This document shows positions 1 to 26,600 of a DNA stretch of 64,000 nucleotides, one piece after another. The position numbers and the translations under genes are program-made. Source of the stretch: Mytilus edulis (taxonomy: Eukaryota); assembly GCF_963676685.1 (NCBI RefSeq), contig NC_092345.1, forward strand, positions 45,012,001 to 45,076,000, read 5' to 3'. Under the pieces are notes generated by a model. It was given only the letters and a program-made list of their open reading frames with translations, searched no databases and had not been told where the DNA came from. Position 1 is the stretch's first letter. Every line of letters begins with the position of its first letter.

Positions 1-917
1 TACACTTCGTGGTTAGTTTTTTCAATAAGAGGAAAAAATATTTTGTAAAATTTAAAATAATAGAAGGACACGACACGACACGTACACTAGCTGATTGATG
101 TATTCTTTTAAGATTGTTCGGTCACTTTTATCAATGCCTATGGGTTTGGTTTTTTTTTAATTTCATAAAACGATGTTATTAATTGACTTACCTTCATATT
201 TGTAGTTATTATATAAAAAAAAGGATCATTTTCAAGAAGTGTACATTGTTAAAAAAAATCTTTTTCAATACTCAGATTACTTCCGGAATTTTAAAGTAAT
301 CATTAATGAAAAAAAAGTTAAGTGTACGGAGCCATACTCACAAGTATTCTCTTTTGCTGAAACAAGAATTAAAATAGGAATGCCGATGCTCTGTTCAAAA
401 TAAAATCAGTGATTATTTGATATGGCGAAAAAACACGACTATCAATTTTATGCATGTATAAGTGGTAATTACTCTTCAATAAAAACAGTGTGTTACCTAT
501 AAAACTGTCATACAAATTTATAAAGTTTTTTAGTAAGCTATCTACACACAATGAGCTGTGATGTTATTTGAATTAAGACAACGTTCGACCACAGTCTAAA
601 TGGCGTGAATGTAAACAACATAAGGTTATCACATGGTTACTTTTGGTTTTTCTTGATAAATATCGATTGAAATATCTCTTACTATCAAATTTATACTTGC
701 ATGTGGAACTGATATTATGATATCAAAATGTATCGGGTATAGTTGTACAAAAAGGAACAGGTGGTAGGAAGTTATGGTTTGAATGAAAACTTGTAATCTG
801 CATGTCATTGATTACAGTTATGTCGGGGTAGTTGCTAAATATAGACCGATCAAAGAAAAATATTATATTTCCTTTCTCAATTTTATGGTAATAATATTTG
901 ATTTGTGCATAACGTAT

Positions 918-1470: not shown

Positions 1471-1548
1471 CGACCCATACTTCTGGCTTGCCAGTAAGAT
1501 TTCCAGGAGTACAGATGTCACACAAATTTGGAGGTGAATCCATTTGCA
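1471..1548 (-). CDS. Gene A exon 4 (secreted Cys-rich protein): (M)QMDSPPNLCDICTPGNLTGKPEVWV
   Basis: Minus strand tttgtatcacAG|...GTCG|GTaagt, 78 nt, phase 1/1. Same length, phase and Cys positions as gene C exon 4 (41678-41755). Confidence 0.88.
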
Positions 1549-2424: not shown

Positions 2425-2510
2425 TTAGAGGTGTTTCTAACAACACAAAGCTGTTCTCACACACGTCGTTAAGTTTTATACATCTGTATATATCTTTATT
2501 TTTCCCTCGT
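2425..2510 (-). CDS. Gene A exon 3: (R)RGKNKDIYRCIKLNDVCENSFVLLETPL
   Basis: ctttgttcAG|...CTAA|GTaagt, 86 nt, phase 2/1. Matches gene C exon 3 (39666-39751). Confidence 0.88.
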
Positions 2511-2714
2511 CTGAACAAAGAAAAAATCATAATGAATCAATAATGATAACAGTGTATTTGCTGAGCAACTTTTTGCTAAAAGATTTTATTGTTACTTATT
2601 TTAGTTTGAAAATTATCATACTAGTACTTGTCAATTAAAGTCAGTTTTTATTTTGACAAAAAAGAAATAAGATTTTTACAAAAATGAACGGGACTGGAAA
2701 AGCATTTCACTTAC

Positions 2715-2874
2715 CTGTTAACAATGAACGGTCCTTCTCTAATCAAACATTCTATAACAATGTCAGGTGCAATATGTAATTGGTATGCATTTGGAACTAG
2801 AAGGTCTATGTCCAGTAATTCATTGTAGAATGTTCTCTTTTGCCAATTACATGGGAAAGAACACATACAGTTCA
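2715..2874 (-). CDS. Gene A exon 2: (V)NCMCSFPCNWQKRTFYNELLDIDLLVPNAYQLHIAPDIVIECLIREGPFIVN(R)
   Basis: T-tract ataaAG|...AACAG|GTaagt, 160 nt, phase 1/2. Lies inside ORF 2711..2905 and matches gene C exon 2. Confidence 0.88.
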
Positions 2875-4222
2875 CTTTATAAAAAAAAACAATTATGTAA
2901 AACATGTCAACTAAAATAGTTTCTAGGTGATGATTTCTATCAGTACCAATTTCAAAACTGTCAGTTTGTTACATTACCATTATAACATCTACGCTAGAAA
3001 CCACTTTCTGTAAATTCTTACAAAATGTTAAATCTTGTAAAAATTTAAATATAAATTTATTTCCTGGATTTGTTGTATTTAAAGTTGGACAAATTCAATA
3101 TTGCTTCAAATGAACTTTTTGTAAAATTCTTTTAAGTACGCTTAAAGATTTATCTGGAAGATTATTTTTTTCATGGCACTGTTGATTGTTTGATAAAAAG
3201 TAAAACAAACGGACCGAACTCAAAGGAAAGATCAAAAAGGGGAAGTCCAGAAAAACACACAAAATCAAACTATATCAATCAACGGAAACGAGTGAAAAAC
3301 AACTGTCATATTTCTAACTTGGTACAAGAATCAAAAGATTTTAAAACCTGAATAAAGTTCGTTGTTTTCTTTTCCGCCAACTCTGACCGCTCCAAATGTG
3401 TTCCTTTTTTATACTTAACTAGCTTTCATTACTACAAAGAGCTTATATTTGTGATAATGTTACTCAAAAAAAAAAAACACCACATAGGTGGTATACATAG
3501 CCACAATCTGGATTCCAATTAGTATTGCTTTTATCAGAGATTTTAATAAACAAAGCTACAAAGTATATCTTAGGTATACAATTTTTAAACACTTCCATAT
3601 GTAAGTTAACGATTTGAAAAGTATTTTAGATTTGAATTAACATACTGCTATAATGCTAATCCATTTCAAATGAATCTCTTGAGTAAAGTCAATAACTCTC
3701 AGCTCATGAAATTTTACAAACGAACGCGTCCCTACATAATTCAAAGAAATGGAGGCTTATAATTCTTACCTTGAATAATAGAGATTAATTATAAAGAAAT
3801 ACAAGTCCCGGAAAATTGTCCTTGAACTACCGTACGTGTAATAGAAAATTTGACGATATTAATAAATATATTGACTCCAACTTATTTGAAATAATTTCGC
3901 AATTAATGGAAAGATTATTTTGCTAATGATAAGCATCAAAACGCAATGAAATTTAATTATACACACAGCAGTCATTATGATAGGAATACAAAAGAGAAGA
4001 CTCTCATACGATTACCACCACCTTTACATGTAATGTTTGTGATGTATGTTATAATATTAAAACGATGAGAAATACTCTTAATTAATTGCACGAAGTTTCT
4101 GGTGGCATCACGGGATAAAGCTTTTCATCTATTCATTACTTACAGACAGACCCTTTACAAGCAAAAAAAATGTTTTGTCGTCTACACTTAAAATGATTTT
4201 TACCAAAAAAAAAAGAATTTAC

Positions 4223-4280
4223 CTTGTTTATAACAGACAAGACCAGCAAATAACAAAGCAATCGTTGCCCTCAGAAGCAT
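4223..4280 (-). CDS. Gene A exon 1, proximal copy (unit 1): signal peptide MLLRATIALLFAGLVCYKQ
   Basis: ATG...CAAG|GTaaat, 58 nt, phase 1, joins exon 2 in frame. Hydrophobic core; lies downstream of TATA and CCAAT boxes. Confidence 0.85.
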
Positions 4281-4377
4281 GCTGTAATTGTTAAGTTCAC
4301 TATTCGATATCACAACGTTTTTGTTTAGCGAGTTTGTTTCTTGTACAGTTGTACTATACAATTTGCAAATTTCTTCT

Positions 4378-4450
4378 TTTTATACTTGAGAGAAAACAAT
4401 GAATTTCTTATGTTCTTTCTATACTCTGACGAGTGTCTTATTCTGATTGG
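4378..4450 (-). promoter_or_regulatory. Core promoter of gene A (unit 1; repeated in all 8 units): CCAAT box 4446-4450 and TATAAAA 4378-4384
   Basis: Minus strand caCCCAATCAGaa, then ~65 bp, then TATAAAAAG about 100 bp before the ATG. Both boxes are conserved in genes B and C. Confidence 0.75.
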
Positions 4451-4927
4451 GTGAAAATCTCTTTCAAAAAGAAAAAAAGTTTGAAAATCAATGAGATTAT
4501 TTTTACGCATGCATAAAAATACTTAAGAAAAAACAAATTGTTTAATGCACAGATATATAAATCAGCATATGTGAACAACAATTACAACATACATGTAAAA
4601 TACAAGTTAAAATCTGCATAGATCAGCAGATGTTTCTCCATATTTTGTATTATAAACATTCATCGTTTCCATTCTCAATTGTTTGATACATGGTTTTATA
4701 TTAAACATGAATAGATTTTAAAATGGACCGAAATAATCACGAATTTAAATCATGAGTGTTAAACCACACATCAGAACCAAATAGATATTAAGAGTTGGAA
4801 AATAAAAAAAAACAAAACAAAACATTTATTAATCTTAACTTGACGCTTTTCAAATTAAATTAGTCAAAAATCATAAAAAAAAAAATATGATATTATAAAA
4901 ATAATTACTAAACATTATATGAACGAA

Positions 4928-5372
4928 TCAGTTACAGCTGGGGGAAACGTCCATTTCTCTAATTTTTGCGCTATCATCACATTTCTTGATCGATGTGAGA
5001 ACAATATTTTTCCTCACTAGTGAATAAGCTGTTGTCGGCAAATGATTGGTCGAAATTGTATTGTGACGTTGAATTTTCTTGGTTTTTTTCTGAATTTTCC
5101 TATTGTGACGATATGGTAAAAAGGCGACCATGCTTGATGACGTCACATAAAAAGTAAACATATTTCTTCAAATTTTTGAAAAGGAGGGCTACAAATCATT
5201 AGAGAAACAAAATCCACCACTTTAACTCGTGTAGTACGATTTTTCTCCACTCTCAACTGTTAAAGTTTAATTATTTATAAAGCTTTGCCAGCCTCACGCT
5301 TTAAATATTAAGATTTAACGGTCTCGAGTGGAGAAATATCGTAGCACACTTGTTGCAGTTATGGAATCTATA
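4928..5372. mobile_element. Non-autonomous element ending in a long imperfect palindrome (5209-5370); present in every unit and in the gene C upstream region (~37380-37810)
   Basis: Arms gtgtagtacgatttttctccactctcaactgttaaa / tttaacggtctcgagtggagaaatatcgtagcacac around a ~14-nt loop. A Crypton-like assignment is inference only. Confidence 0.5.
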
Positions 5373-6861
5373 TATCCAAGACCACATCGATTGATCAGCG
5401 CTTATCTCACCATTGATAATGCAGAGTTGTTCGGATTTGTTCCCCAGAATTCTATATTCTTTAGGCGGGTTAATTTTCAGTGAATTAGATCAAATATATT
5501 ATAGGAATATATTTACTCTTTTATAAAAAAAACAATTATGTAAAACATGTCAACTAAAATAGTGTCTAGGTGATGATTTCTATCAGTACCAATTTCAAAA
5601 CTGTCAGTTTGTTACATTACCTTTATAACATCTACGCTAGAAACCACTTTCTGTAAATTCTTACAAAATGTTAAATCTTGTAAAAAATTAAATATAAATT
5701 TATTTCCCTGGATTTGTTGTATTTAAAGTTGGACAAATTCAATATTGCTTCAAATGAACTGAGTAAAATTCTTTTAAGTACGCTTAAAGATTTATCTGGA
5801 AGATTATTTTTTTCATGGCATTGTTGATTGTTTGATAAAAAGTAAAACAAACGGACCAAACTCAAAGGAAAGATCAAAAAGGGGAAGTCCAGAAAAACAC
5901 ACAAAATCAAACTATATCAATCAACGGAAACGAGTGAAAACCAACTGTCATATTTCTAACTTGGTACAAGAATTCAAAAGATTTTAAAACCTGAATAAAG
6001 TTCGTTGTTTTCTTTCCCGCCAACTCTGACCGCTCCAAATGTGTTCCTTTTTATACTTAACTAGCTTTCATTACTACAAAGAGCTTATATTTGTGATAAT
6101 GTTACCCAAAAAAAACCCCACCACATAGGTGGTATACATAGCCACAATCTGGATTCCAATTAGTATTGCTTTTATCAGAGATTGTAATAAACAAAGCTAC
6201 AAATTATATCTTAGGTATACAATTTTTAAACACTTCCATATGTAAGTTAACGATTTGAAAAGTATTTTAGATTTGAATTAACATACTGCTAAAAAGCTAA
6301 TCAATTTCAAATGAATCTCTAGAGTAAAGTCAATAACTCTCAGCTCATGAAATTTTACAAACGAACGCGTCCCTACATAATTCAAAGAAATGGAGGCTTA
6401 TAATTTTTACCTTGAATAATAGAGATTAATTATAAAGAAATAAAGGTCCCGGAAAATTGTCCTTGAACTACCGTACGTGTAATAGAAAATTTGACGATAT
6501 TAATAAATATATTGACTCCAACTTATTTGAAATAATTTCGCAATTAATGGAAAGATTTTTTTGCTAATGATAAGCATCAAAACGCAATGAAATTTAATTA
6601 TACACACAACAGTCATTATGATAGGAATACAAAAGAGAAGACTCTCATACGATTACCACCACCTTTACATGTCATGTTTTTGATGTATGTTATAATATTA
6701 AAACGATGAGAAATACTCTTAATTAATTGCACGAAGTTTCTGGTGGCATCACGAGATAAAGCTTTTCATCTATTCATTACTTACAGACAGACCCTTTACA
6801 AGCAAAGAAAATGTTTTGTCGTCTACACTTAAAATAATTTTTACAAAAAAAAAGAATTTAC

Positions 6862-6919
6862 CTTGTTTATAACAGACAAGACCAGCAAATAACAAAGCAA
6901 TCGTTGCCCTCAGAAGCAT
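6862..6919 (-). CDS. Exon 1 copy, unit 2 (intact signal-peptide exon)
   Basis: Same 58-nt ATG-to-donor exon; lies inside ORF 6770..6952. Expression is unknown. Confidence 0.65.
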
Positions 6920-9539
6920 GCTGTAATTGTTAAGTTCACTATTCGATATCACAACGTTTTTGTTTAGCGAGTTTCTTGTACAGTTGTACTATACAATTTG
7001 CAAATTTCTCCTTTTTATACTTGAGAGAAAACAATGAATTTCTTATGTTCTTTCTATACTCTGACGAGTGTCTTATTCTGATTGGGTGAAAATCTCTTTC
7101 AAAAGGAAAAAAAGTTTGAAAATCAATGAGATTATTTTTACGCATGCATAAAAATACTTAAGAAAAAATAAATTGTTTAATGCACAGATATATAAATCAG
7201 CATATGTGAACAACAATTACAACATACATGTAAAATACAAGTTAAAATCTGCATAGATCAGCAGATGTTTCTCCATATTTTGTATATTTTAATATTTTGT
7301 ATTATAAACATTCACCGTTTCCATTCTCAATTGTTTGATACATGGTTTTATATTAAACATGAATAGATTTTAAAATGGACCGAAATAATCACGAATTTAA
7401 ATCATGAGTGTTAAACCACACATAAGAACCAAATAGATATTAAGAGTTGGAAAATAAAAAAAAAACAAAACAAAACATTTATTAATCTTAACTTGACGCT
7501 TTTCAAATTAAATTAGTCAAAAATCATAAAAAAAAATATGATATTATAAAAATAATTACTAAACATTATATGAACGAATCAGTTACAGCTGGGGGAAACG
7601 TCCATTTCCCTAATTTTTGCGCTATTATCACATTTCTTGATCGATGTGAGAACAATATTTTCCCTCACTAGTGAATAAGCTGTTGTCGGCAAATGATTGG
7701 TCGAAATTGTATTGTGACGTTGAATTTTCTTGGTTTTTTTCTGAATTTTCCTATTGTGACGATATGGTAAAAAGGCGACCATGCTTGATGACGTCACATA
7801 AAAAGTAAACATATTTCTTCAAATTTTTGAAAAGGAGGGCTACAAATCATTAGAGAAACAAAATCCACCACTTTAACTCGTGTAGTACGATTTTTCTCCA
7901 CTCTCAACTGTTAAATTTTAATTATTTATAAAGCTTTGCCAGCCTCGCGCTTTAAATATTAAGATTTAACGGTCTCGAGTGGAGAAATATCGTAGCACAC
8001 TTGTTGCAGTTATGGAATCTATATATCCAAGACCACATCGATTGATCAGCGCTTATCTCACCATTGATAATGCAGAGTTGTTCGGATTTGTTCCCCAGAA
8101 TTCTATATTCTTTAGGCGGGTTAATTTTCAGTGAATTAGATCAAATATATTATAGGAATATATTAATTTTTTTATAAAAAAAAAACAATTATGTAAAACA
8201 TGTCAACTAAAATAGTTTCTAGGTGATGATTTCTATCAGTACCAATTTCAAAACTGTCAGTTTGTTACATTACCTTTATAACATCTACGCTAGAAACCAC
8301 TTTCTGTAAATTCTTACAAAATGTTAAATCTTGTAAAAAATTAAATATAAATTTATTTCCCTGGATTTGTTGTATTTAAAGTTGGACAAATTCAATATTG
8401 CTTCAAATGAACTGAGTAAAATTCTTTTAAGTACGCTTAAAGATTTATCTGGAAGATTATTTTTTTCATGGCACTGTTGATTGTTTGATAAAAAGTAAAA
8501 CAAACGGCCCAAACTCAAAGGAAAGCTCAAAAAGGGGAAGTCCAGAAAAACACACAAAATCAAACTATATCAATCAACGGAAACGAGTGAAAAACAACTG
8601 TCATATTTCTAACTTGGTACAAGAATCAAAAGATTTTAAAACCTGAATAAAGTTCGTTGTTTTCTTTTCAATAAAGTTCGTTGTTTTCTTTTCCGCCAAC
8701 TCTGACCGCTCCAAATGTGTTCCTTTTTTATACTTAACTAGCTTTCATTACTACAAAGAGCTTATATTTGTGATAATGTTACTCAAAAAAAAAAACACCA
8801 CATAAGTGGTATACATAGCTACAATCTGGATTCCAATTAGTATTGCTTTTATCAGAGATTTTAATAAACAAAGCTACAAAGTATATCTTAGGTATACAAT
8901 TTTTAAACACTTCCATATGTAAGTTAACGATTTGAAAAGTATTTTAGATTTGAATTAACATACTGCTATAATGCTAATCCATTTCAAATGAATCTCTAGA
9001 GTAAAGTCAATAACTCTCAGCTCATAAAAATTTACAAACGAACGCGTCCCTACATAATTCAAAGAAATGAAGGCTTATAATTCTTACCTTGAATAATAGA
9101 GATTAATTATAAAGAAATACAAGTCCCGGAAAATTGTCCTTGAATTACCGTACGTGTAATAGAAAATTTGACGATATTAATAAATATATTGACTCCAACT
9201 TATTTGAAACAATTTCGCAATTAATGTAAAGATTTTTTTGCTAATGATAAGCATCAAAACGCAATGAAATTTAATTATACACACAGCAGTCATTATGATA
9301 GGAATACAAAAGAGAAGACTCTCATACGATTACCACCACCTTTACATGTAATGTTTGTGATGTATGTTATAATATTAAAACGATGAGAAATACTCTTAAT
9401 TAATTGCACGAAGTTTCTGGTGGCATCACGGGATAAAGCTTTTCATTTATTCATTACTTACAGACAGGCCCTTTACAAGCAAAGAAAATGTTTTGTCGTC
9501 TACACTTAAAATAATTTTTACAAAAAAAAAAGAATTTAC

Positions 9540-9597
9540 CTTGTTTATAACAGACAAGACCAGCAAACAACAAAGCAATCGTTGCCCTCAGAAGCAT
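9540..9597 (-). CDS. Exon 1 copy, unit 3
   Basis: Intact, with one synonymous change (TTA to TTG); donor GTaaat intact. Confidence 0.65.
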
Positions 9598-12181
9598 GCT
9601 GTAATTGTTAAGTTCACTATTCGATATCACAACGTTTTTGTTTGGCGAGTTTCTTGTACAGTTGTACTATACAATTTGCAAATTTCTTCTTTTTATACTT
9701 GAGAGAAAACAATGAATTTCTTATGTTCTTTCTATACTCTGACGAGTGTCTTATTCTGATTGGGTGAAAATCTCTTTCAAAAAGAAAAAAAGTTTGAAAA
9801 TCAACGAGATTATTTTTACGCATGCATGAAAATACTTAAGAAAAAATAAATTGTTTAATGCACAGATATATAAATCAGCATATGTGAACAACAATTACAA
9901 CATACATGTAAAATACAAGTTAAAATCTGCATAGATCAGCAGATGTTTCTCCATATTTTGTATATTTGAATATTTTGTATTATAAACATTCACCGTTTCC
10001 ATTCTCAATTGTTTGATACATGGTTTTATATTAAACATGAATAGATTTTAAAATGGACCGAAATAATCACGAATTTAAATCATGAGTGTTAAACCACACA
10101 TCAGAACCAAATAGATATTAAGAGTTGGAAAATAAAAAAAACAAAACAAAACATTTATTAATCTTAACTTGACGCTTTTCAAATTAAATTAGTCAAAAAT
10201 CATTAAAAAAAATATGATATTATAAAAATAATTGCTAAACATTATATGAACGAATCAGTTACAGCTGGGGGAAACGTCCATTTCTCTAATTTTTGCGCTA
10301 TTATCACATTTCTTGATCGATGTGAGAACAATATTTTCCCTCACTAGTGAATAAGCTGTTGTCGGCAAATGATTGGTCGAAATTGTATTGTGACGTTGAA
10401 TTTTCTTGGTTTTTTTCTGAATTTTCCTATTGTGACGATATGGTAAAAAAGCGACCATGCTTGATGTCGTCACATAAAAAGTAAACATATTTCTTCAATT
10501 TTTTGAAAAGGAGGGCTACAAATCATTAGAGAAACAAAATCCACCACTTTAACTCGTGTAGTACGATTTTTCTCCACTCTCAACTGTTAAATTTTAATTA
10601 TTTATAAAGCTTTGCCAGCCTCGCGCTTTAAATATTAAAATTTAACGGTCTCGAGTGGAGAAATATCGTAGCACACTTGTAGCAGTTATGGAATCTATAT
10701 ATCCAAGACCACATCGATTGATCAGCGCTTATCTCACCATTGATAATGCAGAGTTGTTCGGATTTGTTCCCCAGAATTCTATATTCTTTAGGCGGGTTAA
10801 TTTTCAGTGAATTAGATCAAATATATTATAGGAATATATTTACTCTTTTATAAAAAAAAAAAAATTATGTAAAACATGTCAACTAAAATAGTGATGATTT
10901 CTATCAGTACCAATTGCAAAACTGTCAGTTTGTTACATTACCTTTATAACATCTACGCTAGAAACCACTTTCTGTAAATTCTTACAAAATGTTAAATCTT
11001 GTAAAAAATTAAATATAAATTTATTTCCTTGGGTTTGTTGTATTTAAAGTTGGACAAATTCAATATTGCTTCAAATGAACTTAGTAAAATTCTTTTAAGT
11101 ACGCTTAAAGATTTATCTGGAAGATTATTTTTTTCATGGCACTGTTGATTGTTTGATAAAAAGTAAAACAAACGGACCAAACTCAAAGGAAAGATCAAAA
11201 AGGGGAAGTCCAGAAAAACACACAATATCAAACTATATCAATGAACGGAAACGAGTGAAAAACAACTGTCATATTTCTAACTTGGTACAAGAATCAAAAG
11301 ATTTTAAAACCTGAATAAAGTTCGTTGTTTTCTTTTCCGCCAACTCTGACCACTCCAAATGTGTTCCTTTTTATACTTTACTAGCTTTCATTACTACAAA
11401 GAGCTTATATTTGTGATAATGTTACCCAAAAAAAACACCACCACATAGGTGGTATACATAGCCACAATCTGGATTCCAATTAGTATTGCTTTTATCAGAG
11501 ATAGTAATAAACAAAGCTACAAAGTATATCTTAGGTATACAATTTTTAAACACTTCCATATGCAAGTTAACGATTTGAAAAGTATTTTAGATTTGAATTA
11601 ACATACTGCTAAAATGCTAATCCATTTCAAATGAATCTCTAGAGTAAAGTCAATAACTCTCAGCTCATGAAATTTTACAAACGAACGCGTCCCTACATAA
11701 TTCAAAGAAATGGAGGCTTATAATTCTTACCTTGAATAATAGTGATTAATTATAAAGAAATACAAGTCCCGGAAAATTGTCCTTGAACTACCGTACGTGT
11801 AATAGAAAATTTGACGATATTAATAAATATATTGACTCCAACTTATTTGAAATTATTTCACAATTAATGTAAAGATTTTTTTGCTAATGATAAGCATCAA
11901 AACGCAATGAAATTTAATTATACACACAGCAGTCATTATGATAGGAATACAAAAGAGAAGACTTTCATACGATTACCACCACCTTTACATGTAATGTTTG
12001 TGATGTATGTTATAATATTAAAACGATGAGAAATACACTTAATTAATTGCACGAAGTTTCTGGTGGCATCACGGGAAAAAGCTTTTCATCTATTCATTAC
12101 TTACAGACAGACCCTTTACAAGCAAAGAAAATGTTTTGTCGTCTACACTTAAAATAATTTTTACAAAAAAAAAGAATTTAC

Positions 12182-12239
12182 CTTGTTTATAACAGACAAG
12201 ACCAGCAAATAACAAAGCAATCGTTGCCCTCAGAAGCAT
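12182..12239 (-). CDS. Exon 1 copy, unit 4
   Basis: Intact ATG, frame and donor; lies inside ORF 12090..12272. Confidence 0.65.
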
Positions 12240-14841: not shown

Positions 14842-14899
14842 CTTGTTTATAACAGACAAGACCAGCAAATAACAAAGCAATCGTTGCCCTCAGAAGCAT
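14842..14899 (-). CDS. Exon 1 copy, unit 5
   Basis: Intact ATG, frame and donor. Confidence 0.65.
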
Positions 14900-17487
14900 G
14901 CTGTAATTGTTAAGTTCACTATTCGATATCACAACGTTTTTGTTTAGCGAGTTTCTTGTACAGTTGTACTATACAATTTGCAAATTTCTTCTTTTTATAC
15001 TTGAGAGAAAACAATGAATTTCTTATGTTCTTTCTATACTCTGACGAGTGTCTTATTCTGATTGGGTGAAAATCTCTTTCAAAAAGAAAAAAAGTTTGAA
15101 AATCAATGAGATTATTTTTACGCATGCATAAAAATACTTAAGAAAAAATAAATTGTTTAATGTACAGATATATAAATCAGCATATGTGAACAACAATTAC
15201 AACATACATGTAAAATACAAGTTAAAATCTGCATAGATCAGCAGATGTTTCTCCATATTTTGTATATTTGAATATTTTGTATTATAAACATTCACCGTTT
15301 CCATTCTCAATTGTTTGATACATGGTTTTATATTAAACATGAATAGATTTTAAAATGGACCGAAATAATCACGAATTTAAATCATGAGTGTTAAACCACA
15401 CATCAGAACCAAATAGATATTAAGAGTTGGAAAATAAAAAAACAAAACAAAACATTTATTAATCTTAACTTGACGCTTTTCAAATTAAATTAGTCAAAAA
15501 TCATAAAAAAAATTATGATATTATAAAAATAATTACTAAACATTATATGAACGAATCAGTTACAGCTGGGGGAAACGTCCATTTCTCTAATTTTTGCGCT
15601 ATTATCACATTTCTTGATCGATGTGAGAACAATATTTTCCCTCACTAGTGAATAAGCTGTTGTCGGCAAATGATTGGTCGAAATTGTATTGTGACGTTGA
15701 ATTTTCTTGGTTTTTTTCTGAATTTTCCTATTGTGACGATATGGTAAAAAGGCGACCATGCTTGATGACGTCACATAAAAAGAAAACATATTTCTTCAAT
15801 TTTTTTAAAAGGAGGGCTACAAATCATTAGAGAAACAAAATCCACCACTTTAACTCGTGTAGTACGATTTTTCTCCACTCTCAACTGTTAAATTTTAATT
15901 ATTTATAAAGCTTTGCCAGCCTCGCGCTTTAAATATTAAAATTTAACGGTCTCGAGTGGAGAAATATCGTAGCACACTTGTAGCAGTTATGGAATCTATA
16001 TATCCAAGACCACATCGATTGATCAGCGCTTATCTCACCATTGATAATGCAGAGTTGTTCGGATTTGTTCCCCAGAATTCTATATTCTTTAGGCGGGTTA
16101 ATTTTCAGTGAATTAGATCAAATATATTATAGGAATATATTTACTCTTTTATAAAAAAAAAACAATTATGTAAAACATGTCAACTAAAATAGTGATGATT
16201 TCTATCAGTACCAATTGCAAAACTGTCAGTTTGTTACATTACCTTTATAACATCTACGCTAGAAACCACTTTCTGTAAATTCTTACAAAATGTTAAATCT
16301 TGTAAAAAATTAAATATAAATTTATTTCCTTGGATTTGTTGTATTTAAAGTTGGACAAATTCAATATTGCTTCAAATGAACTGAGTAAAATTCTTTTAAG
16401 TACGCTTAAAGATTTATCTGGAAGATTATTTTTTTCATGGCACTGTTGATTGTTTGATAAAAAGTAAAACAAACGGACCAAACTCAAAGGAAAGATCAAA
16501 AAGGGGAAGTCCAGAAAAACACACAATATCAAACTATATCAATCAACGGAAACGAGTGATAAACAACTGTCATATTTCTAACTTGGTACAAGAATCAAAA
16601 GATTTTAAAACCTGAATAAAGTTCGTTGTTTTCTTTTCCGCCAACTCTGACCGCTCCAAATGTGTTCCTTTTTTATACTTAACTAGCTTTCATTACTACA
16701 AAGAGCTTATATTTGTGATAATGTTACTCAAAAAAAAAAGACCACCACATAGGTGGTATACATAGCCACAATCTGGATTCCAATTAGTATTGCTTTTATC
16801 AGAGATTGTAATAAACAGAGCTACAAAGTATATCTTAGGTATACAATTTTTAAACACTTCCATATGTAAGTTAACGATTTGAAAAGTATTTTAGATTTGA
16901 ATTAACATACTGCTAAAATGCTAATCAATTTCAAATGAATCTCTAGAGTAAAGTCAATAACTCTCAGCTCATGAAATTTTACAAACGAACGCGTCCCTAC
17001 ATAATTCAAAGAAATGAAGGCTTATAATTCTTACCTTGAATAATAGAGATTAATTATAAAGAAATACAAGTCCCGGAAAATTGTCCTTGAACTACCGTAC
17101 GTGTAATAGAAAATTTGACGATATTAATAAATATATTGACTCCAACTTATTTGAAATAATTTCGCAATTAATGGAAAGATTTTTTTGCTAATGATAAGCA
17201 TCAAAACGCAATGAAATTTAATTATACACACAGCCTTCATTATGATAGGAATACAAAAGAGAAGACTTTCATACGATTACCACCACCTTTACATGTAATG
17301 TTTGTGATGTATGTTATAATATTAAAACGATGAGAAATACTCTTAATTAATTGCACGAAGTTTCTGGTGGCATCACGGGATAAAGCTTTTCATCTATTCA
17401 TTACTTACAGACAGACCCTTTACAAACAAAGAAAATGTTTTGTCGTCTACACTTAAAATAATTTTTACAAAAAAAAAAAGAATTTAC

Positions 17488-17545
17488 CTTGTTTATAACA
17501 GACAAGACCAGCAAATAACAAAGCAATCGTTGCCCTCAGAAGCAT
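17488..17545 (-). CDS. Exon 1 copy, unit 6
   Basis: Intact ATG, frame and donor. Confidence 0.65.
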
Positions 17546-20142
17546 GCTGTAATTGTTAAGTTCACTATTCGATATCACAACGTTTTTGTTTAGCGAGTTT
17601 CTTGTACAGTTGTACTATACAATTTGCAAATTTCTTCTTTTTATACTTGAGAGAAAACAATGAATTTCTTATGTTCTTTCTATACTCTGACGAGTGTCTT
17701 ATTCTGATTGGGTGAAAATCTCTTTCAAAAAGAAAAAAAGTTTGAAAATCAATGAGATTATTTTTACGCATGCATAAAAATACTTAAGAAAAAATAAATT
17801 GTTTAATGCACAGATATATAAATCAGCATATGTGAACAACAATTACAACATACATGTAAAATACAAGTTAAAATCTGCATAGATCAGCAGATGTTTCTCC
17901 ATATTTTGTATATTTGAATATTTTGTATTATAAACATTCACCGTTTCCATTCTCAATTGTTTGATACATGATTTTATATTAAACATGAATAGATTTTAAA
18001 ATGGACCGAAATAATCACGAATTTAAATCATGAGTGTTAAACCACACATCAGAACCAAATAAATATTAAGAGTTGGAAAATAAAAAAAAAAAAAAACAAA
18101 ACAAAACATTTATTAATCTTTACTTGACGCTTTTCAAATTAAATTAGTCAAAAATCATAAAAAAAAATATGATATTATAAAAATAATTACTAAACATTAT
18201 ATGAACGAATCAGTTACAGCTGGGGGAAACGTCCATTTCTCTAATTTTTGCGCTATTATCACATTTCTTGATCGATGTGAGAACAATATTTTCCCTCACT
18301 AGTGAATAAGCTGTTGTCGGCAAATGATTGGTCGAAATTGTATTGTGACGTTGAATTTTCTTGGTTTTTTTCTGAATTTTCCTATTGTGACGATATGGTA
18401 AAAAGGCGACCATGCTTGATGACGTCACATAAAAAGTAAACATATTTCTTCAAATTTTTGAAAAGGAGGGCTACAAATCATTAGAGAAACAAAATCCACC
18501 ACTTTAACTCGTGTAGTACGATTTTTCTCCACTCTCAACTGTTAAATTTTAATTATTTATAAAGCTTTGCCAGCCTCGCGCTTTAAATATTAAGATTTAA
18601 CGGTCTCGAGTGGAGAAATATCGTAGCACACTTGTTGCAGTTATGGAATCTATATATCCAAGACCACATCGATTGATCAGCGCTTATCTCACCATTGATA
18701 ATGCAGAGTTGTTCGGATTTGTTCCCCAGAATTCTATATTCTTTAGGCGGGTTAATTTTCAGTGAATTAGATCAAATATATTATAGGAATATATTTACTC
18801 TTTTATAAAAAAAACAATTATGTAAAACATGTCAACTAAAATAGTTTCTAGGTGATGATTTCTATCGGTACCAATTTCAAAACTGTCAGTTTGTTACATT
18901 ACCTTTATAACATCTACGCTAGAAACCACTTTCTGTAAATTCTTACAAAATGTTAAATCTTGTAAAAAATTAAATATAAATTTATTTCCTGGATTTGTTG
19001 TATTTAAAGTTGGACAAATTCAATATTGCTTCAAATGAACTGAGTAAAATTCTTTTAAGTACGCTTAAAGATTTATCTGGAAGATTATTTTTTTCATGGC
19101 ACTGTTGATTGTTTGATAGAAGGTAAAACAAACGGACCAAACTCAAAGGAAAGATCAAAAAGGGGAAGTCCAGAAAAACACACAAAATCAAACTATATCA
19201 ATCAACGGAAACGAGTGAGAAACAACTGTCATATTTCTAACTTGGTACAAGAATTCAAAAGATTTTAAAATCTTAATAAAGTTCGTTGTTTTCTTTTCCG
19301 CCAACTCTGACCGCTCCAAATGTGTTCCTTTTTTTTATACTTAACTAGCTTTCATTACTACAAAGAGCTTATATTTGTGATAATGTTACCCAAAAAAACA
19401 CCACATAGGTGGTATACATAGCCACAATCTGGATTCCAATTAGTATTGCTTTTATCAGAGATAGTAATAAACAAAGCTACAAAGTATATCTTAGGTATAC
19501 AATTTTTAAACACTTCCATATGTAAGTTAACGATTTAAAAGTATTTTAGATTTGAATTAACATACTGCTAAAATGCTAATCCATTTCAAATGAATCTCTA
19601 GAGTAAAGTCAATAACTCTCAGCTCATGAAATTTTACAAACGAACGCGTCCCTACATAATTCAAAGAAATGAAGGCTTATAATTCTTACCTTGAATAATA
19701 GAGATTAATTATAAAGAAATACAAGTCCCGGAAAATTGTCCTTGAACTACCGTACGTGTAATAGAAAATTTGACGATATTAATAAATATATTGACTCCAA
19801 CTTATTTGAAATAATTTCGCAATTAATGTAAAGATTTTTTTGCTAATGATAAGCATCAAAACGCAATGAAATTTAATTATACACACAGCCTTCATTATGA
19901 TAGGAATACAAAAGAGAAGACTTTCATACGATTACCACCACCTTTACATGTAATGTTTGTGATGTATGTTATTATATTAAAACGATGAGAAATACTCTTA
20001 ATTAATTGCACGAAGTTTCTGGTGGCATCACGGGATAAAGCTTTTCATCTATTCATTACTTACAGACAGACCCTTTACAAGCAAAGAAAATGTTTTGTCG
20101 TCTACACTTAAAATAATTTTTACAAAAAAAAAAAGAATTTAC

Positions 20143-20200
20143 CTTGTTTATAACAGACAAGACCAGCAAATAACAAAGCAATCGTTGCCCTCAGAAGCAT
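20143..20200 (-). CDS. Exon 1 copy, unit 7
   Basis: Intact ATG, frame and donor. Confidence 0.65.
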
Positions 20201-22804
20201 GCTGTAATTGTTAAGTTCACTATTCGATATCACAACGTTTTTGTTTGGCGAGTTTCTTGTACAGTTGTACTATACAATTTGCAAATTTCTTCTTTTTATA
20301 CTTGAGAGAAAACAATGAATTTCTTATGTTCTTTCTATACTCTGACGAGTGTCTTATTCTGATTGGGTGAACATCTCTTTCAAAAAGAAAAAAAGTTTGA
20401 AAATCAATGAGATTATTTTTACGCATGCATAAAAATACTTAAGAAAAAATAAATTGTTTAATGTACAGATATATAAATCAGCATATGTGAACAACAATTA
20501 GAACATACATGTAAAAAACAAGTTAAAATCTGCATAGATCAGCAGATGTTTCTCCATATGTTGTATATTTGAATATTTTGTATTATAAACATTCACCGTT
20601 TCCATTCTAAATTGTTTGATACATGGTTTTATATTAAACATGAATAGATTTTAAAATGGACCGAAATAATCACGAATTTAAATCATGAGTGTTAAACCAC
20701 ACATCAGAACCAAATAGATATTAAGAGTTGGAAAATAAAAAAAACCAAAACAAAACATTTATTAATCTTAACTTGACGCTTTTCAAATTAAATTAGTCAA
20801 AAATCATAAAAAAATATATGATATTATAAAAATAATTACTAAACATTATATGAACGAATCAGTTACAGCTGGGGGAAACGTCCATTTCTCTAATTTTTGC
20901 GCTATTATCACATTTCTTGATCGATGTGAGAACAATATTTTCCCTCACTAGTGAATAAGCTGTTGTCGGCAAATGATTGGTCGAAATTGTATTGTGACGT
21001 TGAATTTCTTGGTTTTTTTCTGAATTTTCCTATTGTGACGATATGGTAAAAAGGCGACCATGCTTGATGACGTCACATAAAAAGTAAACATATTTCTTCA
21101 AATTTTTGAAAAGGAGGGCTACAAATCATTAGAGAAACAAAATCCACCACTTTAACTCGTGTAGTACGATTTTTCTCCACTCTCAACTGTTAAATTTTAA
21201 TTATTTATAAAGCTTTGCCAGCCTCGCGCTTTAAATATTAAGATTTAACGGTCTCGAGTGGAGAAATATCGTAGCACACTTGTTGCAGTTATGGAATCTA
21301 TATATCCAAGACCACATCGATTGATCAGCGCTTATCTCACCATTGATAATGCAGAGTTGTTCGGATTTGTTCCCCAGAATTCTATATTCTTTAGGCGGGT
21401 TAATTTTCAGTGAATTAGATCAAATATTTTATAGGAATATATTTACTCTTTTATAAAAAAAACAATTATGTAAAACATGTCAACTAAAATAGTTTCTAGG
21501 TGATGATTTCTATCGGTACCAATTTCAAAACTGTCAGTTTGTTACATTACCTTTATAACATCTACGCTAGAAACCACTTTCTGTAAATTCTTACAAAATG
21601 TTAAATCTTGTAAAAAATTAAATATAAATTTATTTCCCTGGATTTGTTGTATTTAAAGTTGGACAAATTCAATATTGCTTCAAATGAACTGAGTAAAATT
21701 CTTTTAAGTACGCTTAAAGATTTATCTGGAAGATTATTTTTTTCATGGCACTGTTGATTGTTTGATAAAAAGTAAAACAAACGGACCAAACTCAAAGGAA
21801 AGATAAAAAAAGGGGAAGTCCAAAAAAAAACCAACCACACAAAATCAAACTATATCAATCAACGGAAACGAGTGAAAAACAACTGTCATATTTCTAACTT
21901 GGTACAAGAATCAAAAGATTTTAAAACCTGAATAAAGTTCGTTGTTTTCTTTTCCGCCAACTCTGACCGCTCCAAATGTGTTCCTTTTTTATACTTAACT
22001 AGCTTTCATTACTACAAAGAGCTTATATTTGTGATAATGTTACTCAAAAAAAAAAAAAAAAACACATAGGTGGTATACATAGCCACAATCTGGATTCCAA
22101 TTAGTATTGCTTTTATCAGAGATTTTAATAAACAAAGCTACAAAGTATATCTTAGGTATACAATTTTTAAACACTTCCATATGTAAGTTAACGATTTGAA
22201 AAGTATTTTAGATTTGAATTAACATACTGCTAAAATGCTAATCCATTTCAAATGAATCTCTAGAGTAAAGTCAATAACTCTCAGCTCATGAAATTTTACA
22301 AACGAACGCGTCCCTACATAATTCAAAGAAATGAAGGCTTATAATTCTTACCTTGAATAATAGAGATTAATTATAAAGAAATACAAGTCCCGGAAAATTG
22401 TCCTTGAACTACCGTACGTGTAATAGAAAATTTGACGATATTAATAAATATATTGACTCCAACTTATTTGAAATAATTTCGCAATTAATGGAAAGATTTT
22501 TTTGCTAATGATAAGCATCAAAACGCAATGAAATTTAATTATACACACAGCCTTCATTATGATAGGAATACAAAAGAGAAGACTTTCATACGATTACCAC
22601 CACCTTTACATGTAATGTTTGTGATGTATGTTATAATATTAAAACGATGAGAAATACTCTTAATTAATTGCACGAAGTTTCTGGTGGCATCACGGGATAA
22701 AGCTTTTCATCTATTCATTACTTACAGACAGACCCTTTACAAGCAAAGAAAATGTTTTGTCGTCTACACTTAAAATAATTTTTACAAATAAAAAAAGAAT
22801 TTAC

Positions 22805-22862
22805 CTTGTTTATAACAGACAAGACCAGCAAATAACAAAGCAATCGTTGCCCTCAGAAGCAT
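22805..22862 (-). CDS. Exon 1 copy, unit 8 (most distal)
   Basis: Intact ATG, frame and donor. Confidence 0.65.
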
Positions 22863-23103
22863 GCTGTAATTGTTAAGTTCACTATTCGATATCACAACGT
22901 TTTTGTTTAGCGAGTTTCTTGTACAGTTGTACTATACAATTTGCAAATTTCTTCTTTTTATACTTGAGAGAAAACAATGAATTTCTTATGTTCTTTCTAT
23001 ACTCTGACGAGTGTCTAATTATGATTGGGTGAAAATCTCTTTCAAAAAGAAAAAAGTTTTAAAATCAATGTGATTATTTTTACGCATGCATAAAAATACT
23101 TAA

Positions 23104-23674
23104 AGTCATAAGAAACGAGTGACCGGTGAAAAATAATGTTCTTCCAATTCTTGAACCAATGCATACAAACATCATAAACTTAGTCTTCTGTGCTCGAATT
23201 TATCATTTTTTTCGTGTAAATTTCGTATAATTGTCAATTTTTTTTTCAATCGGTCAGTTTTGTTGTGAAAATATGGCAGGTAATTAAAGTTCGTGTCTTG
23301 AAGCCGAAGTTTAACGATTGTCACCTGTTTGTCAACAATTGACGAAAAATAAACAAAAAAGCATGGAAATTGAGCACGTGTTTAACATGTAAATTCAGAT
23401 AATAGTTTATTTTAAGGACATCCATGCGTATTGTGGTCACCGGATTTTTACGAGATGTCACACTGAGGTCACCTTGCATACGGAAAATATCTCGGGGGAA
23501 TTGCTTGCTGGAAGGAAGCTATTCAAATAAAGTAAACTTCTTCTAAATATGAATAAATTAAAGAATTTTCTTCAGAAAAAAGTATATGTACATAAGTTTT
23601 ATAATGAAAACTATCCATTGAGTTATTAAAATCATATGCATTATTTTTTTTTTGATTTGAGGTTTCTTATGACT
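23104..23674. mobile_element. 571-bp non-autonomous DNA transposon (Kolobok-type MITE) in unit 8
   Basis: Perfect 13-bp TIR AGTCATAAGAAAC/GTTTCTTATGACT, with TTAA on both sides (23100-23103, 23675-23678). The other seven units carry the empty site tacTTAAgaa. TTAA TSD with purine termini fits Kolobok rather than piggyBac. Confidence 0.9.
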
Positions 23675-26600
23675 TTAAGAAAAAATAAATTGTTTAATGC
23701 ATATATATATAAATCAGCATATGTGAACAACATTTAAAACATACATGTAAAATACAAGTTAAAATCTGCATAGATCAGCAGATGTTTCTCCTTATTTTGT
23801 ATATTTGAATATTTTGTATTTTAAACATTCACCGTTTCCATTCTCAGTTGTTTGATACATGGTTTTATATTAAACATGAATAGATTTTAAAATGGACCGA
23901 AATAATCACGAATTTAAATCATGAGTGTTAAACCACACATCAGAACCGAATAGATATTAAGAGTTGGGAAATAAAAAAACAAAATTAAACATTTATTAAT
24001 CATAACCTGACGCTTTTCAAATTAAATTAGTCAAAAATCATAAAAAAAAATATGATATTATAAAAATAATTACTAAACATTATATGAACGAATCAGTTAC
24101 AGCAGGGGGAAACGTCCATTTCTCTAATTTTTGCGCTATTATCACATTTCTTGATCGATGTGAGAACAATATTTTCCCTCACTAGTGAATAAGCTGTTGT
24201 CGGCAAATGATTGGTCGAAATTGTATTGTGACGTTGAATTTTCTTGGTTTTTTTTTCTGAATTTTCCTATTGTGAAGATATGGTAAAAAGGCGACCATGC
24301 TTGATGACGTCACATAAAAAGTAAACATATCATTAGAGAAACAGATTCCACCACTTTAACTCGTGTAGTATGATTTTTCTCCACTCTCAACTGTTAAATT
24401 TTAATTATTTATAAAGCTTTGCCAGCCTCGCGCTTTAAATATTAAAATTTAACGGTCTCGAGTGGAGAAATATCGTAGCACACTTGTTGCAGTTATGGAA
24501 TCTATATATCAAAGACCACATCGATTAATCAGCGCTTATCTCACCATTGATAATGCAGAGTTGTTCGGATTTGTTCCCCAGAATTCTATATTCTTTAGGC
24601 GGGTTAATTTTCAATGAATTAGATCAAATATATTATAGGAATATATTTACTCTTTTCTATAATCTCCATATGCATTTCTTAAAAGAGAATTCACAATACC
24701 TAATGTAATATTATACATCATAAATTACATTTTACTGAAAAATGTATGAGACAATCTTTCAGATGAAGAAAGGCAACTGTTATATTTCTGATGAATACGT
24801 TACACATGTAGTTGTTACGACTTTATAGAATGTATAGGCTTATATCGATGTTGATATGATGTATAGTTATGTTTACCTTTTATACTGATATTTCCGCTTT
24901 CTCTTATACGACTAAGTGCAAAGTACAGTCTTATTTCGATGTATGATGTATATTCATTTTTTTGGGTATCTCTATTAAACTTTTAATTCGAAAATCTGAA
25001 ATTTGAATTTAGGCAAAAATGATAAGTGTTCTGTCGTTAAGAAATGATGTCTCCAAAATGCTCGTCTTTTTTTCGCCTAAAATAATAATATGGGTGGTCG
25101 TCAATTTAACTTTCTGGTCAGCAGGATTTCCGATGCTATGAAAAAATCATAAACAGGCAGAATAGTTTTGTTTTACCTTAGACCCGATGGGACCTTGTAC
25201 CCTATTCACAATCTGAATGTATAAGCATCAACAATCATCTCTTTATCTAATTCAACACAATTAAGAAGCAAACCTCAGTTATAGAAAATATTTATTGATT
25301 TTCAAATGCTGAAAAAGAGTTATATTCCAACAACATTTGATAAGAAAGTATAATATTATCATACATGATTAAACAAATATGTCATGCACATGTTACACAA
25401 GACAAATAGGTACAAATGTATTAAAAATGTTGTCAGACAATGTTATGCGTTTTCCAGGCTGTTTGTGACGTTTCAATACTAAATCCACGGAATGTGTATT
25501 GATTGCAATTATTGTGGGAGACGAAGATTCATTCATATGTAATAACTACTTTTGAACTAGCTTCCGATACCTAATAGAACACTTAAATCGGTGTTGTTTT
25601 GTCTATTAGTTTTATGATACTGTTTGTTTGTGTTATTACCAATCTTTTGATGCATGACCTAAGCCAATTACAACTGATTATTACAATAAGCTTGAACATA
25701 TATTATTGTTCAAAATGACAAATAAACCAATAAAGAAAAATACTTTATATAAGAGGCAGCAGACAAAATCAACAATCTGAGATTATAAAAATGTTATGTA
25801 ATAAGTAACCATAATGCGTTTTCGAAGGTCAATATTTAGGTTATACTTGCTATATTAGTACTGGCTTATAGAAAGGCAAATGTTAACTTGATGATTTTTC
25901 AAACAAAAATCCATGTGTTGCAAAACAAAGATACAAAGAGGACAAGCAGAAACCACAGGTGGTTGAATGACAGACTACATATCAATCACAAGAATAAGGA
26001 CGAAAAGACAAAAACAAAGTCCATCAAATACATCAATAAAAGCAAGATTATGTAAAACGAACTGGGGAAGTTTGACAATAATGTCGTCAGTTGATAAGTT
26101 TTTTTTATTTCAGCTATTTAGCTTATCATTAGTAAGACAAGAAGATTAAAAAATCAAGATACAAACATGTTGACATAAAGATGTGATTTTAAATTTTAGT
26201 AAGGGGAGGGAGAAGGGGGTGTATGAAGCTACATTGTAAATGCATATTCTTTTATCATGTCAAACTCTGAACGTTGTGTTGTATGTTGCCCCTTTTTCAG
26301 AATCCTGGAAGAGCATCTAAATGTCATTAAAGATTTAAAGTTTCTTTGATCTTAGAAAAAAGAACTCTCTTTCTTTGTCCATCATACGGAATAGTTTGCA
26401 TGTCGCTTAATAAAGTAGGGTAGTTTTCAAGGTATGTTACATACAAGATAGAAGCAATATATATCATATTGGTAGTTTAACAACTATTACCAGGGTCACA
26501 GATCAACAATGATTTTTTTCTACTTTTTCCCATCAGTTTGATTTGAAACTAAAATAGAAAATAATGTTGATTCATTTTTCGTATACTGGTATATTCTAGA

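What the first reader, a model, noticed from the sequence alone, without database searches (positions are those of the whole stretch)
2876..24656. Eight tandem promoter + signal-peptide-exon cassettes upstream of one shared gene body
Seen in sequence: the 2.65-kb unit is not anonymous satellite DNA. On the minus strand each unit holds ~1.2 kb of upstream sequence, a CCAAT box, a TATA box, the 5' UTR, an intact 58-nt exon encoding MLLRATIALLFAGLVCYKQ with a GTaaat donor, and all of intron 1. Exons 2-4 (2715-2874, 2425-2510, 1471-1548) occur only once, downstream of the array. All 8 exon-1 copies keep their ATG, frame and donor; the only difference I found is synonymous. Paralogue C has one cassette, which suggests the array is derived. 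Established: arrays of first exons spliced to shared exons exist (UGT1A, clustered protocadherins), but those diversify the product. Inference: identical first exons would instead change dosage or regulation, so copy number could tune output of a secreted protein without duplicating the gene. A neutral recent expansion is not excluded, because the units are young.
Basis: partly seen in the sequence, partly recalled or inferred. Interest (0 to 1): 0.88.

Follow-up and report, generated by a model that had tools for sequence, protein, structure and literature searches.

The report
Eightfold promoter–first-exon array in mussel gene
In the blue mussel genome, the promoter, first exon and first intron of a mussel-only secreted protein gene are repeated eight times head to tail, most likely through recent duplication, and a similar array is already known in the fruit-fly gene hydra.

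Summary
Window 2869-24652 (minus strand) is eight head-to-tail units of about 2.65 kb that differ by 1.1-2.5% in substitutions. Each unit keeps the CCAAT and TATA boxes, the 5'UTR, a 58-nt ATG exon and a GTAAAT donor. Exons 2-4 occur once.

The gene is real. It matches a RefSeq Mytilus edulis 'uncharacterized protein' of 202 aa.

The array is derived. Six complete paralogues have one cassette each. The breakpoints share AAAG microhomology, one inside the intron-1 acceptor. As a result, six of seven junctions rebuild an acceptor that is followed by GAG-TAA.

'Paralogue C' is a truncated 5' fragment. RefSeq nevertheless lists an isoform that joins C's first exon to this gene's exons 2-6.

Which units are transcribed, and how copy number varies, could not be tested. 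The raw DNA run barely matched, and the RNA contigs cannot be assigned to units.

My reading is a recent segmental amplification whose effect on output is unproven. Upstream cassettes probably fire but are redundant or unproductive. Drosophila hydra has nine tandem first exons, at least four of them used, yet lower expression.

The scan has noted repeats seeded at exon edges elsewhere in this genome.

The parts
2869..24652 (-). Tandem array of eight 2.64-2.68-kb units (u8 is 3.2 kb). Each unit holds about 1.23 kb of upstream sequence, the 5'UTR, exon 1 and intron 1.
4223..4280 (-). Exon 1 of unit 1 (ATG at 4280, donor GTAAAT at 4222-4217). This is the only copy directly followed by the real exon 2. 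The other copies lie at 6862-6919, 9540-9597, 12182-12239, 14842-14899, 17488-17545, 20143-20200 and 22805-22862.
   Evidence: The splice 4223|2874 appears in an RNA contig.
4281..4450 (-). Core promoter and 5'UTR of unit 1: CCAAT at 4446-4450, TATAAAAAG at 4376-4384, and a u1-specific 4-bp insertion at 4336-4339. All eight units carry the same block.
   Evidence: The block from -480 to +170 is 62-90% invariant (mostly 76-90%) across four paralogues.
5505..5535 (-). Unit junction. The T-run, ATAAAAG and AG (5519-5518) rebuild the intron-1 acceptor, and the sequence that follows reads GAG TAA in the exon-1 frame. Equivalent AGs end at 10845, 13487, 16146, 18800 and 21448. At 8169 the AG has been lost.
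24640..24670 (-). Distal breakpoint of the array (TATAGAAAAG|AGTAAATATATTCC). It shares A-rich AAAG microhomology with the true acceptor (TTATAAAG|TG at 2875).
   Evidence: Gene B's upstream sequence is homologous across this point.
23103..23675 (.). A 575-bp mobile element inserted only in u8, 241 bp upstream of its ATG, inside the conserved promoter block.
   Evidence: The 40 copies scored elsewhere in the genome are 98-99% identical, out of more than 2800 first-look candidates.
2715..2874 (-). Exon 2 (single copy), the start of the mature Cys-rich protein.
2425..2510 (-). Exon 3
1471..1548 (-). Exon 4
342..356 (-). The last exon lies outside the window at G000:C2:45011753-45011961 (L011 9753-9961, minus strand).
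   Evidence: The loose end of the RNA contig at 1471 reads micro-exon followed by last exon. The pieces match RefSeq protein P0004.
27762..29532 (-). 'Gene C', an older truncated 5' fragment. Exon 1 is at 29475-29532 (G13V relative to the array). Intron 1 follows, then exon 2 from 27908 down to 27762 and an immediate TAA. There are no later exons. Its exon-1 peptide is the N-terminus of RefSeq isoform X3 of the array gene.

Best explanation
This is a real, evolutionarily recent segmental amplification inside an expressed gene. It is not a purpose-built regulatory device.

The gene encodes a 202-aa secreted, 14-cysteine protein found only in Mytilus, with a Tyr/Lys/Gly/Ser-rich tail. Its function is unknown.

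Origin (inferred from the sequence):
- A first tandem duplication joined an AAAG about 1.23 kb upstream of the ATG to the AAAG of the intron-1 acceptor. This copied the promoter, exon 1 and intron 1 but not exon 2.
- Unequal crossing-over between misaligned units then raised the number to eight. The pairs u4/u7 and u5/u8 point to a three-unit register shift.
- A young mobile element later landed in u8.

How it works (shown in part, inferred in part):
- Unit 1 makes the normal mRNA. The splice chain from exon 1 through to the last exon is shown in RNA, although that RNA cannot be assigned to a unit.
- Every unit carries the whole conserved promoter-proximal block, so upstream units are expected to fire in the same cells (inference).
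- The donor of an upstream transcript first meets a rebuilt acceptor with the same branch region and T-run as the real one. Using it gives a 20-aa product (the 19 exon-1 residues plus E, then a stop) and probably nonsense-mediated decay.
- Only transcripts that skip all rebuilt acceptors would give normal mRNA. The net effect on output may therefore be neutral, slightly positive or negative.
For: - Eight units differ by 1.1-2.5% in substitutions, with unit-specific indels and no assembly gaps.
- The junction sequence is the same at all seven joins, and the two outer breakpoints share AAAG microhomology.
- The paralogues have one cassette, and B's upstream homology runs across the distal breakpoint.
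- The tree groups u4+u7 (100/98) and u5+u8 (97/95).
- The TE in u8 has 98-99% identical copies genome-wide.
- The spliced RNA contig has depth 161 and carries all the junctions.
- The exon pieces match RefSeq XP_071153231.1/232.1 exactly.
- The rebuilt acceptor is followed by a stop.
- Other AI notes on this genome report tandem repeats seeded at exon edges well above chance, with splicing kept at the copy next to the exon. This is a lead only and was not tested here.
- In Drosophila hydra, nine tandem first exons go with lower, not higher, expression.
Against: - All eight cassettes are intact despite 1-2.5% divergence.
- The core promoter plus exon 1 has 5 variable sites in 224 columns, against 135 in 2356 elsewhere (Fisher p=0.029). 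Only 1.3% of windows of that size are as low. This hints at constraint or gene conversion acting on several units.
- RefSeq lists two accessions with the same protein, plus isoform X3, which starts at C's exon 1 about 26.6 kb upstream of exon 2. If that isoform is real, distal first exons can skip every rebuilt acceptor.
- One junction has lost its AG.
- No read-level test of copy number or of unit usage was possible.
Confidence: 0.6

Rival explanations
1. Functional multi-promoter array. All eight promoters, and perhaps C's, fire. Each cap-proximal donor splices to the single exon 2. Copy number therefore sets the output of the secreted protein.
For: - All the signals are intact in all eight units.
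- The core promoter and exon 1 are among the least variable 1.3% of windows.
- RefSeq has two accessions with an identical protein, plus isoform X3, which starts at a first exon beyond the array.
- Duplicated identical promoter/first-exon cassettes are all usable in mouse Pcdh-alpha (PMC4151104) and in hydra.
Against: - Rebuilt acceptors followed by a stop sit between every upstream donor and exon 2.
- No joint from an upstream unit to exon 2 was seen, and no RNA could be assigned to a unit.
- Exon 1 alone shows no significant deficit of changes (1 of 58, p=0.37), and other windows of the unit are equally invariant.
- Hydra's nine cassettes go with about 22-fold lower expression.
- Isoform X3 may be an alignment artefact. 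The V-type exon 1 is the state seen in the M. galloprovincialis and M. trossulus relatives, so reads from such alleles would map best to C's exon.
Confidence: 0.2
2. The array lowers expression. Possible routes are read-through from upstream promoters interfering with the productive unit-1 promoter, decoy splicing that diverts transcripts to decay, or silencing induced by the repeats.
For: - The decoy acceptor followed by a stop.
- Poly(A) signals lie inside the inter-exon-1 stretch, at 5271, 4830 and 4546.
- The hydra precedent, where the authors propose local heterochromatinisation.
- The Pcdh duplication increased methylation of a duplicated promoter.
Against: There are no expression data for this species by copy number. 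The orthologous or allelic transcript in run X20 is abundant (depth 161), but the structure of its genome at this locus is unknown.
Confidence: 0.12
3. Assembly artefact. The true locus has fewer units, and the array was inflated by the assembler.
For: - No spanning reads or read depth could be examined. The only raw-read DNA run laid 2 reads.
- The array (21.8 kb) is longer than a typical HiFi read (my own knowledge).
Against: - The units differ at 140 substitution sites, about 1.1-2.5% pairwise. They also carry private indels: a 24-bp duplication in u3, 17-bp and 33-bp deletions, and a 575-bp TE in u8. Sequencing error does not produce these, and they give an assembler many anchors.
- There are no gaps.
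- No extra copies sit on unplaced scaffolds.
Confidence: 0.06

Closest known systems
Drosophila melanogaster hydra (CG1338): nine tandem alternative first exons (PMC1904467)
   Same: In both cases a young, lineage-restricted gene has had its short coding first exon and promoter duplicated in tandem many times, upstream of one shared gene body. The copies are near-identical and keep their core promoter motifs. In hydra, 5'RACE showed that at least four copies are used.
   Different: - Hydra's copies are flanked by the transposon DINE-1. Here the junction is a plain microhomology join inside the intron-1 acceptor.
- Each unit here carries the whole intron and rebuilds an acceptor followed by a stop.
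- The exon here encodes a signal peptide.
- Usage of the copies is not shown here.
Clustered protocadherin / UGT1A variable first-exon arrays
   Same: A tandem row of promoter plus first exon, each with its own donor, upstream of shared downstream exons. An engineered duplication of identical Pcdh-alpha cassettes showed that each duplicate can be expressed (PMC4151104).
   Different: In those clusters the first exons are large, old and divergent, and they diversify the protein. Here they are 58 nt, nearly identical (one synonymous change) and young. Those arrays have no acceptors between the first exons and the constant exon, whereas here six rebuilt acceptors intervene.
Intragenic tandem segmental duplication (partial gene duplication, a copy-number variant) formed by microhomology and expanded by unequal crossing-over
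   Same: Head-to-tail units, one recurrent junction, short microhomology at the breakpoints, a single-copy state in the paralogues, and a tree that suggests block-wise growth.
   Different: Eight copies that all preserve a complete promoter, first exon and intron are more than the usual one-step duplication. Polymorphism has not been measured here.
Spliced-leader RNA gene arrays
   Same: Tandem units of a promoter, a short exon and a donor.
   Different: The exon here is the ATG/signal-peptide exon of the adjacent gene, and the 'intron' is homologous to intron 1 of the paralogues. There is no Rfam match. To my knowledge, trans-splicing has not been reported in molluscs.

Membership tests
Hydra-type tandem array of near-identical alternative first exons | Several tandem copies of the first exon, with upstream sequence, ahead of a single copy of the remaining exons | tested here: met
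   Eight copies of exon 1, with exons 2-4 present once
Hydra-type tandem array of near-identical alternative first exons | Each copy keeps its core promoter motifs, start codon and splice donor | tested here: met
   Alignment of all eight units
Hydra-type tandem array of near-identical alternative first exons | More than one copy is used as a transcription start | tested here: inconclusive
   The RNA contig stops at 4327, before the unit-specific sites. RefSeq's two accessions with one protein, and isoform X3, are suggestive only.
Protocadherin/UGT1A-type variable first-exon cluster | The first exons encode different protein segments, so the product is diversified | tested here: not met
   All eight encode the same 19 residues
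Protocadherin/UGT1A-type variable first-exon cluster | The first exons have a donor and no acceptor lies between them and the constant exon | tested here: not met
   Six of seven unit junctions carry a rebuilt acceptor
Microhomology-mediated tandem duplication expanded by unequal crossing-over | One recurrent head-to-tail junction, with short microhomology between the two outer breakpoints | tested here: met
   Junction TTTTATAAAAG|AGTAAAT, distal ...TATAGAAAAG|AGTAAAT, proximal ...TTATAAAG|TGAAC
Microhomology-mediated tandem duplication expanded by unequal crossing-over | A single-copy ancestral state | tested here: met
   Gene B and five other paralogues match the cassette once each. Orthologous loci in other species could not be read.
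Microhomology-mediated tandem duplication expanded by unequal crossing-over | Copy number varies among individuals | not testable with these tools
   The only raw-read DNA run laid 2 reads, and the other runs are contigs, which cannot give depth.
Spliced-leader RNA gene array | A match to a known SL RNA model, or an Sm-site-bearing short RNA | tested here: not met
   No Rfam match at E<=1 on 2700-8300

The most novel reading that the evidence does not exclude
The array, together with the orphan cassette of fragment C upstream of it, works as a copy-number dial. Every cassette fires, each cap-proximal donor skips the rebuilt acceptors and reaches the one exon 2, and differences in unit number among mussels set how much of this secreted protein is made. 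This would be regulatory copy-number variation without duplication of the gene body.
Probability: 0.13. Interest if true: 0.7.

Novelty: new member of a known kind. Interest (0 to 1): 0.4.

Why it matters
If the upstream cassettes are used, this locus is a natural experiment in three things:
- how a cell chooses among identical promoters;
- how a cap-proximal donor chooses between a nearby rebuilt acceptor and the real one up to 20 kb away;
- whether promoter copy number alone changes gene output.

It also adds a kilobase-scale case to this scan's impression that tandem duplications in the mussel genome tend to break at exon edges. As it stands, it is a neat structural variant in an uncharacterised, mussel-only gene. 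It has a clear precedent in Drosophila hydra, where more first exons did not mean more expression.

Tried and rejected
- **Read depth and copy number.** The single raw-read DNA run on offer (X24, another organism) laid only 2 reads, so it gave no depth, no junction support and no copy number. The other runs are contigs and cannot show depth.
- **Assigning RNA to units.** The only well-covered RNA contig (X20) ends at 4327, short of the 4-bp marker. It also carries the I>V codon seen in the M. galloprovincialis relative, so it may come from another species or allele.
- **Low-depth contigs inside the array.** In X18 and X19 these cover 3086-3456, 4364-4537 and about 4528-4720. They could be read-through RNA. 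They could equally be traces of genomic DNA, which an eight-copy sequence would assemble first. I did not count them as evidence.
- **Protein family.** There are no Pfam matches for the exon pieces or for full-length database relatives. The ESM Atlas gave only sub-threshold DUF7042-7044 leads (0.84). The AlphaFold model had pLDDT 44.8, so I made no fold search.
- **Literature.** Searches for the tail repeat and for the accessions found nothing.
- **RNA families.** There are no Rfam matches.
- **Junction in other samples.** The junction pattern was not found in metagenome contigs.
- **Recursive-splice-site idea.** The GTAAAT hexamer sits one base after the rebuilt AG, so I considered recursive splicing. 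I set it aside because re-splicing would add one base per round and break the frame.
- **Joined spliced model.** Exon pieces were searched and compared by reference, and full-length work used database proteins (P0004 and relatives).


Full report
**What is there**

The window is G000:C2:45012001-45076000 of a 1.37-Gb, 2368-scaffold genome. That scaffold count and size match the Darwin Tree of Life Mytilus edulis assembly xbMytEdul2.2, as tabulated in PMC11304980.

Between 2869 and 24652 the minus strand carries eight head-to-tail units spaced 2635-2678 bp apart. Pairwise substitution divergence is 1.10-2.53%. There are 140 variable sites in 2580 fully aligned columns. The units also carry private indels: a 24-bp duplication in u3, 17-bp and 33-bp deletions, and a 575-bp insertion in u8. 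The window has no N. These are distinct sequences, not repeated reads of one copy.

**The cassettes**

Every unit holds the same exon 1, with ATGs at 4280, 6919, 9597, 12239, 14899, 17545, 20200 and 22862. Each encodes MLLRATIALLFAGLVCYKQ and ends in AAG|GTAAAT. The only change is a synonymous TTA>TTG in u3. The CCAAT box, the TATA box and the 5'UTR are kept in all eight units. u1 has a private 4-bp insertion, and u3 and u7 share a T>C change.

An alignment of unit 1 with three complete paralogues shows a conserved block from about -480 to +170 around the ATG. Sequence further upstream is poorly conserved. Each unit therefore contains the whole conserved promoter-proximal block. In u8 that block is split at -241 by the 575-bp insertion. 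The insertion is a very abundant, very young mobile element: the 40 copies scored are 98-99% identical, out of more than 2800 first-look candidates.

**The gene**

Exons 2 (2715-2874), 3 (2425-2510) and 4 (1471-1548) occur once. The gene continues with a 15-nt micro-exon at 342-356 and a last exon just outside the window (L011 9753-9961, stop TAA).

A 709-nt contig of depth 161 in run X20 carries the joints 4223|2874, 2715|2510 and 2425|1548. Its overhang reads micro-exon followed by last exon. Compared exon by exon, every piece is found in order in the RefSeq protein P0004. This is a 202-aa protein with accessions XP_071153231.1 and XP_071153232.1, named 'uncharacterized protein'.

Relatives occur only in Mytilus species. 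None has a name or a Pfam domain. The genome has about seven close copies, all on this chromosome. The protein has a signal peptide, 14 cysteines and a tail of YSGEKKKSTYGS-like repeats whose number ranges from one to about twelve among the paralogues. The structure prediction was too poor to use (pLDDT 44.8).

**How the array arose**

The seven internal junctions all read ...T-run-ATAAAAG|AGTAAATATATTCC. The distal edge reads ...TATAGAAAAG|AGTAAATATATTCC. The proximal edge is the real acceptor...T-run-ATAAAG|TGAACTG. The two outer breakpoints therefore share A-rich AAAG microhomology, and one of them lies inside the intron-1 acceptor.

Gene B's upstream sequence stays homologous across the distal edge. 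Gene B and five other paralogues match the cassette once each. The single cassette is therefore ancestral. A maximum-likelihood tree groups u4 with u7 and u5 with u8 with strong support. This is what an unequal exchange with a three-unit offset would leave.

My reading is one microhomology-mediated duplication followed by unequal crossing-over. Other AI notes on this genome say that tandem repeats begin at exon edges far more often than chance. I did not test that, but this array would be a large-scale example.

**What the junction does**

Because the break lies in the acceptor, six of the seven junctions rebuild a T-run plus AG with the same upstream intron sequence as the real site. The junction at 8169 has lost its AG. 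Spliced to exon 1, the next codons are GAG TAA.

A transcript that starts in units 2-8 meets this decoy 1.3 kb after its donor, long before the real exon 2. The stretch after the decoy also holds poly(A) signals at 5271, 4830 and 4546. Upstream cassettes are therefore not clean first-exon modules like those of protocadherin or UGT1A genes. To be productive they must skip up to seven acceptors, rebuilt ones at all but one junction.

**Evidence on use of upstream cassettes**

This evidence is thin.
- The X20 contig ends at 4327, short of the unit markers. It also has the I>V codon of the M. galloprovincialis relative, so it may not come from an eight-unit genome.
- The low-depth contigs inside the array in X18 and X19 could be read-through RNA or traces of genomic DNA. 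No joint to a decoy acceptor was seen, but contigs show presence, not absence.
- RefSeq gives two accessions for one protein. It also gives an 'isoform X3' (P0015) whose first 19 residues are those of fragment C's exon 1 (G13V) and whose remainder is this gene's exons 2-6.
- C's exon is the only such exon on this strand besides the array copies, so that model implies a 26.6-kb intron across the whole array.
- That isoform may be real. It may also arise from reads of alleles with the ancestral V-type exon 1, which would align best to C.

**Signs of selection**

The core promoter plus exon 1 has 5 variable sites in 224 columns, against 135 in 2356 elsewhere (Fisher p=0.029). Only 1.3% of windows of that size are as low. 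Exon 1 alone is not significant, and other stretches of the unit are equally quiet. This is a hint of constraint or gene conversion, no more.

**'Paralogue C'**

C has an intact promoter, exon 1 and intron 1. Its exon 2 stops 13 nt short, at 27762, and runs into TAA and unrelated sequence. No later exons are present. It is an older 5' fragment, about as diverged from the array as gene B is. It is not an intact single-cassette paralogue.

**Comparison with known systems**

The closest precedent is Drosophila hydra. It has nine tandem, near-identical first exons with promoters, and at least four are used as start sites. Expression is nevertheless about 22-fold lower than in D. simulans.

An engineered duplication in mouse Pcdh-alpha shows that identical duplicated cassettes can each be expressed, with changes in methylation.

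The mussel array shares the architecture. It differs in three ways: its microhomology junction, the inclusion of the whole intron, and the rebuilt acceptor followed by a stop. It fails the defining feature of protocadherin/UGT1A clusters, because the first exons do not diversify the product. It is not an SL RNA array.

**Verdict**

The most likely explanation (0.6) is a real, recent segmental amplification in which unit 1 is the productive cassette. A dosage function is possible (about 0.2, or about 0.13 in its full form) but untested. An assembly artefact is unlikely (0.06).

Full-length analyses used database proteins.

Noticed in passing
It is present in the RefSeq proteins and in the RNA contig overhang. 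Gene B is therefore a 6-exon, 214-aa gene (P0005), not a 5-exon, 209-aa gene.
   Followed up: yes
window 27762-29532 (minus): Fragment C is a truncated 5' copy (promoter, exon 1, intron 1 and most of exon 2, then TAA). Even so, RefSeq isoform X3 (XP_071153233.1) uses its first exon with the array gene's exons 2-6. Either an orphan first exon has been captured by the downstream paralogue, or this is an alignment artefact from V-type alleles.
   Followed up: partly
window 23103-23675: The 575-bp element inserted in u8 belongs to a very abundant family. The 40 copies scored are 98-99% identical, and they lie on nearly every chromosome. It appears to be a recently active non-autonomous transposon.
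   Followed up: partly
window 43065-43142 (gene B last exon); proteins P0005, P0009, P0023: The C-terminal 36-bp (12-aa) repeat YSGEKKKSTYGS varies from about 1 to 12 copies among the paralogues and alleles. This is a Tyr/Lys/Gly/Ser-rich tail of unknown role.
   Followed up: no
window about 3177-3369 and 5107-5492: Two dispersed repeats lie inside each unit. One is about 130 bp, sits in intron 1 and has many copies on other chromosomes. The other lies upstream of exon 1, has an internal inverted repeat and shows high depth in RNA-like runs. Neither sits at the unit junction.
   Followed up: partly
window 5511-5519 and equivalents: The donor hexamer GTAAAT sits one base after the rebuilt AG (AAAAG|A|GTAAAT). 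This resembles a recursive splice site, but re-splicing would add one base and shift the frame.
   Followed up: no
window 8646-8693: A perfect 24-bp tandem duplication, private to u3, lies in intron 1.
   Followed up: no
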